Shown in pieces: positions 29,288 to 59,350 of a stretch of DNA of 64,000 nt. The notes under the pieces are model-generated. The model did no database searches. It saw only the letters and a program-made list of their open reading frames with translations, and was not told the DNA's origin. The stretch lies in the sequence record MW057919.1; one strand, written 5' to 3'. Each line of letters begins with the position of its first letter. The first letter of the stretch is position 1. The position numbers and the translations under genes were made by a program.

Positions 29288-29832
29288 TGGAGGGCATTGA
29301 TATGCCAGCAACTAATGCTGTACGCCCATTTGGTCGTAATTACTCAGGTGGTCAACAACAGGCCATTTCACGGTTCACTGCTCGTCCCGGTGATCCTCAA
29401 GTTGAAGAACTATATCTTATCTTTACCAACTTTCCTGCACAAACTGCATATTGGGAATTCCATAAGAAAGTTCTAGCTTGTGCTATTCGTCTTTTTAGCG
29501 GAAACTATAATTGGTTTATTCTACAGGACAATAATAGTAATATTGATAGTTATAATTATCAATTCCTATTAGATACTGTTCGATACATTGCTACGGGTCA
29601 TCGACGTATTTCAATTACCCAATGGCCAATGTTACTAGCTACTGAACCAGATGCTGGTGCACAACTCATTGAACCGCGCGCTGAAATTGCTACTCTCTTT
29701 AATGAGTTAAAATTAGATCTAGATACTGTTTCAATGATCCAGAATTGGGTTAAACACAAAAACGGTATGAATGATCTAATGTATACCCTACATCTACTAT
29801 TTGGATCTGTAGAAGTAATAGATAAGGACTGA
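29287..29832 (+). CDS. Virion/minor capsid protein (gp91 position)
   Basis: 181 aa; translationally coupled to the previous gene. Confidence 0.75.
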   Translation: MEGIDMPATNAVRPFGRNYSGGQQQAISRFTARPGDPQVEELYLIFTNFPAQTAYWEFHKKVLACAIRLFSGNYNWFILQDNNSNIDSYNYQFLLDTVRYIATGHRRISITQWPMLLATEPDAGAQLIEPRAEIATLFNELKLDLDTVSMIQNWVKHKNGMNDLMYTLHLLFGSVEVIDKD

Positions 29833-56457: not shown

Positions 56458-58701
56458 ATGAGCGTACATGCCCTAAGAGAACTGTTTAAACACAAAGGCG
56501 AAAAGAATTACGAAGTCTTCTCAATGGAAGATTTCATTGGCCGCCTAGAAAGTGAAATTGGTCTAAATGACAGCGTTGTTAGTCAAGGTCGTTCCCTTAT
56601 TAGCAGCATTTCACATGAAAACTTCGGTACCGTGCAAGCTACCGACATTCAAGATGCCGCTGCAATTTATAACAAAATGCAAATGCTCGTTAACGACTAT
56701 GGTTTCGAACGAGTAAGTTCCAGTGATCCTCAAGTACGTGCTCGTGAAGAACGTGTCCGTGAGAACCAAATCACTGCTGCTACCATGGCTGCTATCGCCT
56801 GTGCTGATGAAACTAAATATATCCGTGCACTACGTGGTATTACCAAAGCTAAAGCTTCTAATGAAGATCATGTTAAGGTTGTACAGCATCAGTTCAATGG
56901 CCCTGCTGGTGGCATTCAAGTATTCGAAAATGGTGTTGGCCTAGAGAACTATAACGAGAAGTCACAGCGTGATTTCCGTGTTGTAACTATTGGTTATAAC
57001 CTAGCTGCTAGCCGTCAGGATGAATTCGCTGAGCGTATCTATCCGACCACCGTTATCAACCCGATTGAAGGTGGTGTTGTTCAGGTTCTTCCTTACATCG
57101 CTGTAATGAAAGACGTTTACCACGAAGTATCCGGCGTTAAGATGGATAACGAAGAAGTGAACATGGTAGAAGCCTATCGTGATCCTTCCATCCTCGACGA
57201 CGAAAGCATTGCACTAATTCCTGCCCTAGATCCGGCTGGTTCCAATGCTGACTTCTTCGTAGACCCGGCTCTTGTTCCTCCGTACACCATCAAGAACGAG
57301 CAGAACCTAACTATCACTACTGCTCCGCTAAAAGCGAACGTACGTCTTGATCTAATGGGTAACTCCAATGCTAACCTACTCATTCAGCGTGGCATGCTTG
57401 AAGTTTCTGACACCATTGATCCGGCTGGTCGTCTAAAGAACCTATTCGTTCTACTCGGCGGTAAAGTTGTTAAGTTCAAGGTTGACCGTCTACCTCGCGC
57501 TGTGTTCCAGCCCGATCTAGTTGGTGATACCCGGAACGCAGTTATCCGTTTCGATAGCGATGACCTTGTTGTTAGTGGCGATACCACTTTCATCGACGGT
57601 TCAGCTGATGGCGTTATTAACGACCTTAAGACTGCTAAACTAAGCCTACGTCTAAGCGTTGGTTTTGGTGGTACTATCAGCCTATCCAAAGGCGATTCTA
57701 AGTTTGGTGCTACCGACACTTACGTCGATAAAGTTCTAAACGAAGATGGCCAGGTAATGGATAATGCTGACCCGGCTGTTAAAGCTATTCTAGATCAGCT
57801 AACTGACCTAGCTGTTATCGGTTTCGAACTAGATACTCGCTTCACCAACACTAACCGTCGTCAGCGTGGTCACCTACTACAGACCCGTGCACTACAGTTC
57901 CGTCATCCGATCCCGATGCACGCTCCTGTAACTCTACCGATGGACACCATGACCGATGAAGGTCCGGGTGAGGTTGTTAAAGCTCTAACTGTTAACACCA
58001 ACATCCGTAACAGCAACAACGCTGTTAAGCGCATGCTTAACTACCTTGCTCAACTACGTGAAGTTGTACACAATGGTTACAACCGTCCGAAGTTTGGTAT
58101 CATCGAAGGTGCACTATCCGCTGTAATGCGTCCGACCTATCGTTACAAAGAACTAGATCTTGAGAAAGTCATCGACACCATCAAGTCTAAAGATCGTTGG
58201 GACGACGTTTGCGCTGCGATCCTAAACTGTGTTAAAGCTGAGCTATTCCCGGCTCACCGTGATTCCAACATTGAAGCTGCCTTCCGTGTTATCTCCGGTA
58301 ACCAGGATGAAACTCCGATGTATCTCTTCTGCTCCGACAAAGAGATTGCTAACTATCTAATGACTAAAGGTGACGACCGTACTCTAGGTGCTTATCTCAA
58401 GTACGATATCGTTTCCACCAACAACCAGCTATTTGATGGTAAGCTAGTTGTAATTCCGACCCGCGCAGTACAACAAGAAAACGACATCCTCTCCTGGGGC
58501 CAGTTCTTCTACGTATCTACTGTTATCGCTGACCTACCGATCACTCGTGGTGGTCACCAGGTTACTCGCGAAATCGCGGCCATTCCGTTCAACCTACACG
58601 TCAACAACATTCCGTTCGCGCTAGAGTTCAAGATCACTGGCTTCCAGAAAGTCATGGGCGAAACTCAGTTCAACGGTAAGCTTGCTGATCTTAAGCCGTG
58701 A
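56458..58701 (+). CDS. gp120: Major capsid protein
   Basis: 747 aa recognised as phiKZ gp120 (MSVHALRELFKHKG...); GLE|NYN maturation site near residue 163; strong codon bias; ends in TGA. Confidence 0.95.
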   Translation: MSVHALRELFKHKGEKNYEVFSMEDFIGRLESEIGLNDSVVSQGRSLISSISHENFGTVQATDIQDAAAIYNKMQMLVNDYGFERVSSSDPQVRAREERVRENQITAATMAAIACADETKYIRALRGITKAKASNEDHVKVVQHQFNGPAGGIQVFENGVGLENYNEKSQRDFRVVTIGYNLAASRQDEFAERIYPTTVINPIEGGVVQVLPYIAVMKDVYHEVSGVKMDNEEVNMVEAYRDPSILDDESIALIPALDPAGSNADFFVDPALVPPYTIKNEQNLTITTAPLKANVRLDLMGNSNANLLIQRGMLEVSDTIDPAGRLKNLFVLLGGKVVKFKVDRLPRAVFQPDLVGDTRNAVIRFDSDDLVVSGDTTFIDGSADGVINDLKTAKLSLRLSVGFGGTISLSKGDSKFGATDTYVDKVLNEDGQVMDNADPAVKAILDQLTDLAVIGFELDTRFTNTNRRQRGHLLQTRALQFRHPIPMHAPVTLPMDTMTDEGPGEVVKALTVNTNIRNSNNAVKRMLNYLAQLREVVHNGYNRPKFGIIEGALSAVMRPTYRYKELDLEKVIDTIKSKDRWDDVCAAILNCVKAELFPAHRDSNIEAAFRVISGNQDETPMYLFCSDKEIANYLMTKGDDRTLGAYLKYDIVSTNNQLFDGKLVVIPTRAVQQENDILSWGQFFYVSTVIADLPITRGGHQVTREIAAIPFNLHVNNIPFALEFKITGFQKVMGETQFNGKLADLKP

Positions 58702-58782
58702 GCTGGAAAGGGTTACCGTTATCTAGAAAATGGGACTATCCGTTATTTGGAAGACGGTAATGCCCGGAAGTTAGAAGAGTAA
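58702..58782 (+). other. In-frame extension behind the capsid UGA (candidate readthrough domain)
   Basis: 26 sense codons AGKGYRYLENGTIRYLEDGNARKLEE then TAA; 8-residue repeat with synonymous codon differences; no independent start. Confidence 0.65.
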
Positions 58783-58786
58783 CAGA

Positions 58787-58817
58787 CATAGGCCCTCCCT
58801 TCGGGGAGGGCTTTATG
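58787..58817. terminator. CATA-hairpin(UUCG)-TATG element after the capsid gene
   Basis: CATA-G-GCCCTCCC-TTCG-GGGAGGGC-TT-TATG, 4 nt after the extension's TAA. Confidence 0.8.
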
Positions 58818-58837
58818 TTGTATTACATTAAAAAAAG

Positions 58838-58854
58838 TTTAAGATCTATATTAC
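58838..58854 (+). promoter_or_regulatory. phiKZ-type early promoter (TTTAA-GATC-TATATTAC)
   Basis: Exact consensus; would drive the operon containing nvRNAP gp123. Confidence 0.8.
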
Positions 58855-58897: not shown

Positions 58898-59350
58898 ATG
58901 AACGTTCAATTATTTCCAGAAGTCATCGAAAGATGGCAAGATGCCCTAAGGGTATCTCTTATAGAAAAAAATACCATGGTAGATAATAAGATGTCTACCG
59001 TAGATGATGATAAATACATTAATACTTTCTTTGAAGAATTCCATCCTGTTCAGGATGCCTTTATGCCCAAAGGGCTAGAGGACTTTATTACTGATTATGC
59101 CAAGAAAAACATTGAGGAGATCCTTCAAGAAAAACAGTTTAAGCGGGCCACCGAAAAGTTATATTGTTCGAGTGACCCGCATAAATGGCAGAAATCAAGT
59201 AATAAGGAAAAGAGTGAATCCTTTAAGGGAAGGTCCGTACATCAAACTAAAAAGAGGCTCCCCAACATTGTAGATTTGGAGGCCGTTGTGATTAAGGTAG
59301 ATTTCAATGGTAACACTAAAAATTGCGGGGCTTACTCAAGTATCAGTTAA
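58898..59350 (+). CDS. Hypothetical protein (gp121 position)
   Basis: 150 aa; AGGT RBS. Confidence 0.75.
   Translation: MNVQLFPEVIERWQDALRVSLIEKNTMVDNKMSTVDDDKYINTFFEEFHPVQDAFMPKGLEDFITDYAKKNIEEILQEKQFKRATEKLYCSSDPHKWQKSSNKEKSESFKGRSVHQTKKRLPNIVDLEAVVIKVDFNGNTKNCGAYSSIS

What the first reader, a model, noticed from the sequence alone, without database searches (positions are those of the whole stretch)
58699..58782. Stop-codon readthrough extension of the major capsid protein with R-x-L-E-(N/D)-G repeats
Seen: the capsid gene ends in TGA, while abundant head genes here (27184, 28355, 31170, 34152, 37072) end in TAA. It is followed in frame by 26 codons, AGKGYRYLENGTIRYLEDGNARKLEE-TAA, all inside the transcript before the hairpin at 58792. 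The repeat is conserved as protein with synonymous changes (CGT TAT CTA GAA AAT GGG vs CGT TAT TTG GAA GAC GGT), which points to selection on translation, and no start codon could express it alone. Known: Qbeta A1 (UGA readthrough) and T7 10B (frameshift) are minor extended coat forms. Inference: a sub-stoichiometric 774-aa capsid variant (~3 kDa larger) carrying a docking motif for decoration, fibre or inner proteins.
Basis: partly seen in the sequence, partly recalled or inferred. Interest (0 to 1): 0.85.

Follow-up and report, generated by a model that had tools for sequence, protein, structure and literature searches.

The report
Readthrough tail on phiKZ capsid protein
The major capsid gene of the giant Pseudomonas phage phiKZ ends in a UGA stop that relatives in at least seven genera keep, always followed by a short conserved peptide-coding tail, so a small share of capsid subunits very probably carries an extra 26-residue tail that has not been described in the literature I could search.

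Summary
The window is a phiKZ-type genome, and the ORF at 56458..58701 is gp120, the major capsid protein (MCP).

In one genome this is not beyond chance. In 38 distinct relatives it is:
- 27 have TGA plus a 24-30-codon extension carrying R-x-x-E-[DN]-G octapeptide repeats.
- 10 have TAA and no extension, from at least 5 independent losses.
- 1 has TGA followed by an in-frame Ig-like gene.

The second stop varies freely (TAA 17, TGA 6, TAG 4). The six motif residues are held by 2-6 synonymous codons each. Nucleotide differences at those columns are 0.12, 0.03 and 0.51 for codon positions 1, 2 and 3. None of 120 MCP protein clusters has the tail fused on.

I found no in-frame start, SECIS element, suppressor tRNA, or RNA structure selected beyond what the peptide imposes.

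The same triple repeat is the true C-terminus of gp143, a virion protein and holin regulator, in all 46 full-length clusters of its family.

Best reading: programmed low-level UGA readthrough makes a minor 774-aa MCP that displays a gp143-type tail at capsomer centres. The function of the tail, and direct protein evidence for it, are still missing.

The parts
56458..58701 (+). gp120 major capsid protein gene (747 codons plus TGA)
   Evidence: 100% identical to PHIKZ120. Pfam PhiKZ_MCP, E=5e-228.
58699..58701 (+). Leaky UGA stop, preceded by Pro codon CCG and followed by G
   Evidence: TGA in 27 of 27 extension-bearing relatives. The next base is A in 19, G in 8, C in 1 and never T, counted over all 28 TGA-ending sequences. 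The last residue is P 12, A 11, G 3, V 1.
58702..58779 (+). 26-codon in-frame readthrough extension
   Evidence: Open in frame 0 in all 27 relatives; the other five frames are not consistently open. The motif columns show a coding-type substitution pattern.
58717..58740 (+). Octapeptide repeat unit 1 (R-Y-L-E-N-G-T-I)
   Evidence: R, E and G are invariant or nearly invariant across relatives and are encoded by 2-6 synonymous codons.
58741..58764 (+). Octapeptide repeat unit 2 (R-Y-L-E-D-G-N-A)
   Evidence: Same as unit 1. It matches the repeats of the gp143 tail.
58765..58779 (+). Partial repeat unit 3 (R-K-L-E-E)
   Evidence: An R-x-L-E ending is shared with the gp143 family C-termini.
58780..58782 (+). 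Second stop (TAA)
   Evidence: It varies freely among relatives: TAA 17, TGA 6, TAG 4. This serves as an internal control for the fixed first stop.
58790..58813 (+). Intrinsic-terminator-like hairpin ending the capsid transcript
   Evidence: The stem is kept by compensatory changes in relatives (alignment A3). The extension lies upstream of it in every relative.

Best explanation
This is a programmed, low-level readthrough of the UGA that ends the phiKZ major capsid gene.

Most ribosomes terminate and make the 747-aa gp120. A minority insert an amino acid at UGA, most likely through a host near-cognate tRNA such as tRNA-Trp (inferred). They then translate 26 more codons to the TAA at 58780. 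The product is a 774-aa form, about 3.0 kDa larger.

The added peptide consists of three octapeptide repeats, R-x-L-E-[DN]-G-x-x. It is the same module that forms the extreme C-terminus of the virion protein and holin regulator gp143.

The gp120 C-terminal arms meet at the centre of each capsomer, so the tail would emerge there on a few subunits per capsid. It probably engages whatever partner the gp143 tail engages, or associates with that tail directly.

Shown: the layout, its conservation, selection at the peptide level, the coupling of TGA with the tail, and the homology to the gp143 tail. Inferred: that readthrough happens, its low efficiency, the inserted residue, and the function.
For: 1. 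TGA is the first stop in 27 of 27 distinct extension-bearing sequences from at least seven genera plus uncultured lineages. The second stop varies at about genome-wide frequencies (genome usage).
2. All 10 lineages without an extension have TAA. On an NJ tree these represent at least 5 independent losses. One of them (L049) retains an out-of-frame remnant of the last repeat.
3. Peptide-level selection is evident. R, E, G, R, E, G are each kept in 25-27 of 27 sequences and encoded by 2-6 synonymous codons, including CGN/AGR switches. Pairwise differences at these columns are 0.12, 0.03 and 0.51 for codon positions 1, 2 and 3. Linker columns differ at about 0.5 at all three positions. Indels come in multiples of three.
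4. There is no conserved in-frame start codon, and conservation begins immediately after the TGA.
5. None of 120 MCP clusters (58-100% identity) has the motif fused to its C-terminus. A constitutive fusion is therefore never seen.
6. The same triple repeat is the genuine C-terminus of gp143 in all 46 full-length clusters, down to 33% identity. The extension's only PHROG hit is the last 23 positions of that family. The motif occurs only at these two places in 136 kb of phiKZ, where 0.0003 is expected.
7. The cryo-EM model ends at residue 747. The C-terminal arms form a six-helix bundle around a ~9 A pore at hexamer centres and contact the outer-surface protein gp244 at pentamers (PMC11297242). 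This gives a steric reason for a sub-stoichiometric tail.
8. Coliphage Qbeta makes its minor coat protein A1 by about 5% UGA readthrough, and near-cognate tRNAs can read stop codons (PMC7026636). A C-terminal proline prolongs pausing at termination (PMC5009743).
Against: There is no direct protein or ribosome evidence. No paper in the searchable library reports extension peptides or readthrough of gp120, and the cryo-EM and atlas papers do not mention it.

Overall pN/pS of the extension is only 0.64, against 0.28 for the last 60 MCP codons. Only about 9 residues are constrained.

No dedicated stimulatory RNA element was found. The predicted hairpin is no more stable than the peptide sequence alone would give: mean z is -0.24 against a synonymous-codon null.

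The feature is dispensable in several lineages, which have lost it. Phages without the MCP tail still keep the gp143 tail, so the two tails are not obligate partners.
Confidence: 0.77

Rival explanations
1. The stretch is a conserved untranslated nucleic-acid element, for example a 3' UTR structure, a terminator accessory or a DNA site. Its open frame would then be incidental.
For: The region folds better than mononucleotide shuffles in all 27 sequences, with mean z of -2.2. In phiKZ, a 56-nt hairpin starts 9 nt after the UGA. RNAalifold finds a small conserved stem with two compensatory pairs.
Against: Folding is no better than a synonymous-codon null, with mean z of -0.24. The consensus structure has only -6.9 kcal/mol. 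Conserved columns differ at the third codon position only, and arginine switches between CGN and AGR. An untranslated element does not predict any of these. It also does not predict the frame-0 openness, the three-base indels, or the match to a real protein tail in gp143.
Confidence: 0.04
2. The 26 codons are a separate small gene, or are translated by termination-reinitiation, and give a free peptide instead of an extended capsid protein.
For: A purine-rich Shine-Dalgarno-like run follows the TGA in many relatives. Automatic annotation placed a small ORF here in two records.
Against: No ATG, GTG or TTG is conserved in frame. In phiKZ the only candidates are ATC and TTG, in the middle of the motif. 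Conservation starts at the first codon after the TGA. The ORF annotated in Viktualia is in another frame and does not encode the motif. Reinitiation also would not explain why the upstream stop must be TGA.
Confidence: 0.05
3. The UGA is decoded specifically, either as selenocysteine through a SECIS element or by a phage-encoded suppressor tRNA. It is not read by near-cognate leakage.
For: UGA is the selenocysteine codon, and a hairpin lies just downstream in phiKZ.
Against: No Rfam family, SECIS included, matches even at E<=10. No RNA structure is conserved beyond the peptide null. The seven phiKZ tRNAs are Thr, Asn x2, Asp, Met, Pro and Leu, none with a UGA-reading anticodon. TGA is also an ordinary stop for 13 of 70 genes.
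Confidence: 0.03
4. The extension is an evolutionary leftover. An ancestral C-terminal tail was cut off by a nonsense mutation, and it now persists without function or is read only as translational noise.
For: The tail has been lost at least 5 times, so it is dispensable. Overall pN/pS is 0.64.
Against: A dead tail would accumulate stops, frameshifts and replacements at the motif residues. Synonymous sites here differ at about 0.5, yet 27 of 27 sequences are intact with invariant R, E and G. The first stop never drifts to TAA or TAG while the tail is present, although the second stop does.
Confidence: 0.05
5. Readthrough is efficient late in infection, so most capsid subunits carry the tail and it simply goes unseen because it is disordered.
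For: Icosahedrally averaged maps would not show a flexible tail. The model ends exactly at residue 747.
Against: If the tail were wanted on every subunit, a sense codon would do, yet none of 120 MCP clusters has one. Six tails would have to pass a ~9 A pore region at each hexamer centre. Efficient UGA suppression would also extend the other 19% of genes that end in TGA.
Confidence: 0.04

Closest known systems
Coliphage Qbeta minor coat protein A1 (UGA readthrough of the coat cistron)
   Same: A leaky UGA ends the coat or capsid gene. A small fraction of subunits gains a C-terminal extension and is built into the capsid (about 5% for A1; PMC7026636).
   Different: Qbeta is a small ssRNA phage with a T=3 coat of an unrelated fold, and its extension is a large globular domain. 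Here the phage is a 280-kb dsDNA jumbo phage with an HK97-fold T=27 capsid, and the tail is a 26-residue repeat peptide. There is no sequence relationship: the extension has no Pfam hit.
Frameshift-derived capsid extensions of tailed phages (T7 10B, T3, Lactobacillus A2, Listeria A118/A500/PSA)
   Same: One capsid gene of a dsDNA tailed phage gives a major form and a minor C-terminally extended form through recoding at its 3' end (PMC5009743).
   Different: Those cases use -1 or +1 frameshifting into another frame, often to add an Ig-like domain. Here the extension is in frame 0 behind a stop codon. No slippery site is needed, and the added piece is a short repeat.
C-terminal tail of phiKZ gp143 (phrog_2935; virion structural protein and holin-specific lysis regulator)
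   Same: It has three R-x-L-E-[DN]-G-x-x units at the extreme C-terminus. In phiKZ, 13 of 21 residues are identical in register. The tail is conserved in all 46 full-length clusters of the family.
   Different: In gp143 the tail follows a DUF7941-like globular domain that resembles baseplate protein gp127, and it is translated constitutively. On gp120 it follows the capsid C-terminal arm and needs readthrough. Nucleotide identity is only 57%, so this is not a recent copy.
Stop-codon-reassigned phages (genome-wide TGA or TAG recoding with suppressor tRNAs)
   Same: A stop codon is read as sense during late-gene translation.
   Different: Here TGA remains a normal stop for other genes (13 of 70). 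There is no suppressor tRNA, and only this one site shows the conserved pattern.

Membership tests
Programmed stop-codon readthrough giving a minor capsid protein (Qbeta A1 type) | The capsid gene ends in a leaky stop, followed in the same frame by an open extension lying inside the same transcript. | tested here: met
   TGA at 58699, 26 open codons, TAA, then the terminator hairpin at 58790.
Programmed stop-codon readthrough giving a minor capsid protein (Qbeta A1 type) | Stop-codon identity and an open extension are conserved in diverged relatives. | tested here: met
   27 of 27 have TGA with an open extension. All 10 losses have TAA. The second stop varies.
Programmed stop-codon readthrough giving a minor capsid protein (Qbeta A1 type) | The extension evolves as protein-coding sequence. 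| tested here: met
   Differences at motif columns are 0.12, 0.03 and 0.51 by codon position. Each conserved residue uses 2-6 synonymous codons.
Programmed stop-codon readthrough giving a minor capsid protein (Qbeta A1 type) | The extended protein is detected, and the readthrough efficiency is measured. | not testable with these tools
   No peptide or ribosome-footprint data were available, and no report was found in the library.
Programmed stop-codon readthrough giving a minor capsid protein (Qbeta A1 type) | Sequence homology to the A1 readthrough domain. | tested here: not met
   The extension gives no Pfam family at E<=1. Its only PHROG hit is the gp143 family. It works like A1 but is not a relative of it.
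gp143-type C-terminal octapeptide-repeat tail (phrog_2935) | Three R-x-[LYM]-E-[DN]-G-x-x units ending the polypeptide. | tested here: met
gp143-type C-terminal octapeptide-repeat tail (phrog_2935) | The tail follows the DUF7941-like globular domain of the family. | tested here: not met
   Here the tail follows the MCP C-terminal arm. gp120 matches only PhiKZ_MCP. Only the tail module is shared.
Bacterial selenoprotein gene (SECIS-directed UGA) | A conserved SECIS hairpin lies just 3' of the UGA. | tested here: not met
   No Rfam match at E<=10. The consensus structure is weak, and there is no excess stability over the synonymous-codon null.
Programmed frameshift capsid extension (T7 10B type) | The extension is in the -1 or +1 frame and is reached at a slippery site before the stop. 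| tested here: not met
   The conserved peptide is in frame 0. Frames +1 and +2 are not consistently open.
Stop-codon-reassigned phage genome | In-frame TGA occurs in many genes, together with a cognate suppressor tRNA. | tested here: not met
   TGA ends 13 of 70 annotated genes. The seven tRNAs include no suppressor.

The most novel reading that the evidence does not exclude
The readthrough tail is a capsid-borne copy of the C-terminal tail of gp143. gp143 is found in virions, regulates the holin gp142, and has the fold of a baseplate and fibre adaptor domain.

If the two tails co-assemble or compete for one partner, then a few capsomer centres per capsid would recruit or titrate gp143. This would account for gp143 being detected in virions. 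It could also couple lysis timing to the number of capsids made, or it could give the head a few fibre-adaptor docking points.

The eight-residue period, with a fixed glycine in each unit, is also compatible with a short oligomeric beta-structure stub. That resemblance is recalled from memory and was not tested.
Probability: 0.15. Interest if true: 0.9.

Novelty: new variant of a known kind. Interest (0 to 1): 0.78.

Why it matters
phiKZ is the reference nucleus-forming jumbo phage. Its capsid has been solved at near-atomic resolution and its virion proteome catalogued, yet a second, recoded form of its most abundant protein appears to have gone unnoticed.

If the tail is confirmed, several things follow:
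- It would be, as far as the searchable literature shows, the first conserved stop-codon readthrough in the capsid gene of a tailed dsDNA phage. The known cases in tailed phages use frameshifting.
- It would add a sub-stoichiometric, symmetry-breaking component to the T=27 shell.
- It would link the capsid to gp143, a protein recently tied to lysis timing.
- It would show that stop-to-stop databases are needed when phage proteomes are searched.

The claim can be tested directly with existing samples by targeted mass spectrometry.

Tried and rejected
**RNA explanations**
- A Rfam scan at E<=10 gave only chance-level hits and no SECIS.
- RNAalifold gave a weak consensus structure.
- Single-sequence folds looked stable against shuffles. 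That stability vanished against a null that keeps the peptide. I therefore dropped a dedicated stimulatory hairpin as a claim.

**Other ways to express the tail**
- Independent initiation: no conserved start codon. The small ORF annotated in Viktualia is in another frame.
- Phage suppressor tRNA: none among the seven phiKZ tRNAs, and none in the window.
- Fused forms: none in 120 MCP clusters.

**Relation between the two tails**
- Co-variation between the MCP tail and the gp143 tail within the same genome: nothing obvious by eye.
- Obligate partnership between the two tails: rejected, because TAA lineages keep the gp143 tail.

**Other checks**
- The motif at 58845-58854 is not enriched in the window.
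- gp143 itself has no solved structure by sequence search.
- The metagenome scan added only 7 loci.

**Not done**
- The pieces were searched apart.
- The 26-residue piece is below the length limit of the structure predictor.

**Slip note.** None was entered into a tool or used as evidence, and none is written out here. The string searched was copied from the window.
Full report
**Identity of the locus.** The 2.4-kb stretch around the finding is 100% identical to Pseudomonas phage phiKZ and to dozens of phiKZ-type isolates. The ORF 56458..58701 is PHIKZ120, the 747-aa major capsid protein (MCP). It matches Pfam PhiKZ_MCP at E=5e-228. The next gene, PHIKZ121, starts at 58898.

**The observation.** It is exact.
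- TGA lies at 58699-58701.
- 26 open codons follow in frame 0 (58702-58779), ending at TAA 58780-58782.
- A 10-bp G+C-rich hairpin lies at 58790-58813.
- The tail holds two full octapeptide units and one partial unit of the form R-x-L-E-[ND]-G-x-x. The synonymous differences between units are as quoted.

Taken alone this is not remarkable. TGA ends 13 of 70 genes in this phiKZ segment, and 26 open codons have a probability of about 0.15 at this base composition.

**Comparative test.** I collected the 3' end of the MCP gene from several sources:
- isolates of other genera;
- IMG/VR contigs;
- metagenomes;
- contigs that encode MCP clusters found by protein search.

This gave 38 distinct sequences, with 59-100% identity over the C-terminal third of the MCP. 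They sort as follows.

| First stop | What follows | Count |
|---|---|---|
| TGA | in-frame extension of 24-30 codons with the same motif | 27 |
| TAA | no extension | 10 |
| TGA | in-frame ATG-initiated ORF with an Ig-like Big_2 domain, six bases downstream (L027) | 1 |

On a neighbour-joining tree the extension occurs on both sides of the midpoint root. Noxifer and L026 lie on one side, and phiKZ, PhiPA3, PS119XW, Phabio, 201phi2-1 and Psa21 on the other. The extension is therefore ancestral to the group. The TAA lineages represent at least five independent losses. One of them (L049) still carries the last repeat out of frame, and another (L033) keeps an eight-codon vestige.

The second stop gives an internal control. 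It is TAA in 17, TGA in 6 and TAG in 4 sequences, close to genome-wide usage. The first stop is TGA in 27 of 27.

**Is the extension translated?** Several results say it is.
- Frame 0 is open in every sequence, while the other five frames are not consistently open.
- Indels are multiples of three.
- Six columns are held in 25-27 of 27 sequences: R, E, G, R, E, G. They are encoded by 2-6 synonymous codons each. Glycine uses all four codons, and arginine switches between the CGN and AGR families.
- Pairwise nucleotide differences at these columns are 0.12, 0.03 and 0.51 for codon positions 1, 2 and 3. Linker columns differ at about 0.5 at every position.
- Overall pN/pS is 0.64, against 0.28 for the last 60 MCP codons. 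The peptide is a short constrained motif set in free linkers.
- No in-frame start codon is conserved, and conservation begins at the first codon after TGA.
- None of 120 MCP protein clusters carries the motif fused to its C-terminus. The tail is never made constitutively.

**Mechanistic alternatives.** None found support.
- Rfam gives no SECIS or other credible match.
- The consensus RNA structure is weak.
- Each extension folds better than mononucleotide shuffles, with mean z of -2.2. It does not fold better than random synonymous encodings of the same peptide, with mean z of -0.24. The hairpin seen in phiKZ is therefore a by-product of the repeat, because arginine codons pair with Asp-Gly codons. 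It may still matter physically, but nothing shows it is selected.
- The seven phiKZ tRNAs are Thr, Asn x2, Asp, Met, Pro and Leu. There is no suppressor.
- The local context is consistent across relatives but loose. The base after TGA is A in 19, G in 8 and C in 1, and never T. The last residue is Pro in 12, Ala in 11, Gly in 3 and Val in 1.

Near-cognate decoding, as in the roughly 5% UGA readthrough that makes Qbeta A1 (PMC7026636), is the simplest mechanism. A C-terminal proline is known to prolong pausing at termination (PMC5009743).

**What the tail is.**
- A tblastn search with the 26 residues finds exactly two places in every phiKZ genome. The second is the C-terminus of gp143 (PHIKZ143), which ends in three units of the same octapeptide.
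- The gp143 family search returned 47 clusters, down to 33% identity. All 46 full-length clusters end in this way; the remaining one is a partial sequence that lacks the C-terminus.
- The extension's only PHROG hit is the last 23 positions of that family.
- In 136 kb of phiKZ translated in six frames, the double unit occurs only at these two sites, where 0.0003 is expected.
- In register, the two phiKZ tails share 13 of 21 residues but only 57% of nucleotides. This is an old shared module and not a recent copy.

**What is known about gp143.**
- It is annotated as a virion structural protein.
- It was recently reported to be a non-essential, holin-specific lysis regulator (PMC12894885; bioRxiv 10.1101/2025.11.23.690004).
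- Its AlphaFold2 model (mean pLDDT 90) has a globular part resembling PHIKZ127, a protein of the baseplate outer periphery (9xqd chain 0).
- The same fold is the N-terminal module of many jumbo-phage virion and tail-fibre proteins. gp126 and gp127 are DUF7941 paralogues.
- In the model, the tail residues show beta-bridges with a period of eight residues.
- Three phage contigs whose MCP ends in TAA without a tail still encode gp143 with its tail. The gp143 tail therefore does not depend on the MCP tail.

**Where the tail would sit.** In the 2024 capsid structure, gp120 is modelled from residue 164 to 747. Residues 728-747 form the C-terminal arm. Six arms form a helix bundle around a ~9 A pore at each hexamer centre. 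In pentamers the arm contacts the outer-surface protein gp244 (PMC11297242). A tail added to residue 747 would therefore emerge at capsomer centres. Crowding there gives a plausible reason for keeping it sub-stoichiometric. The paper does not mention extra density or readthrough, and neither does the 2026 virion atlas.

**Conclusion.** The evidence supports a conserved, programmed UGA readthrough that makes a minor 774-aa form of the phiKZ capsid protein. That form carries a gp143-type repeat tail.
- Shown: the layout, its phylogenetic depth, the TGA-tail coupling, the peptide-level constraint, and the homology to gp143.
- Inferred: the readthrough event itself, its low level, the inserted residue, and the function.
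- My working view of the function is display of a binding or assembly module shared with gp143.

No paper in the searchable library describes this. I rate it a new variant of a known kind. It works like Qbeta A1 and like the frameshift-derived capsid extensions of T7, T3, A2 and the Listeria phages. It differs from them in virus type, recoding mechanism or added module.

**Slip note.** None was entered into a tool or used as evidence, and none is written out here.

Noticed in passing
window 58813-58822 and 58845-58854: Two short motifs downstream of the terminator stem are conserved across genera, although the spacer around them is not (alignment A3). One is a TTTATG-containing run directly after the stem. 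The other is a ten-base A+T-rich box about 45 bases before gene 121. The second is not enriched elsewhere in the window. They may be phage promoter elements for gene 121, but the link to published phiKZ promoter motifs rests on memory only.
   Followed up: partly
window 29302-29832 and 29842 onward: Head gene gp91 also ends in TGA followed by G. The ATG of the internal head protein gene gp92 lies three codons downstream in the same frame. Readthrough would therefore fuse the two proteins. This could be chance, since one adjacent gene pair in three shares a frame.
   Followed up: no
L027:2218-2832 (IMGVR_UViG_3300043122_000192): In this uncultured relative the MCP ends in TGA. Two codons later, in the same frame, an ATG opens a 201-aa ORF with a Big_2 Ig-like domain (Pfam E=4.7e-9). 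It could be a separate decoration gene, a readthrough fusion, or both.
   Followed up: partly
L008:1501-2034 (phiKZ gp143) and L092:1009-2333 (gp126, gp127): The globular part of gp143 has the fold of baseplate protein gp127 (9xqd chain 0) and of the N-terminal module of many jumbo-phage tail-fibre proteins. gp126 and gp127 are DUF7941 members. This sits oddly with the recent assignment of gp143 as a cytoplasmic holin regulator.
   Followed up: partly
protein clusters P0064-P0120; loci L028-L031, L034: MCPs of the TAA lineages that lack the repeat tail often carry constitutive C-terminal tails of 10-35 residues, rich in acidic residues, Gly, Thr and Pro, and frequently ending in Thr-Pro. These may be a different solution for decorating capsomer centres.
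   Followed up: no
L044:1086-1184 (phage Viktualia); HPP-Temi record under hit H148: In the Viktualia record, automatic annotation placed a small hypothetical ORF over the MCP stop in a different frame, and its translation does not contain the conserved motif. The HPP-Temi record also has a hypothetical protein annotated under the match, which I did not inspect.
   Followed up: partly
window 1-64000 versus NC_004629.1 61811-125810: The window is not base-for-base collinear with the phiKZ reference over its whole length. Small indels shift some annotated coordinates. It is therefore a phiKZ-type strain and not necessarily the reference isolate. The capsid region itself is identical.
   Followed up: no
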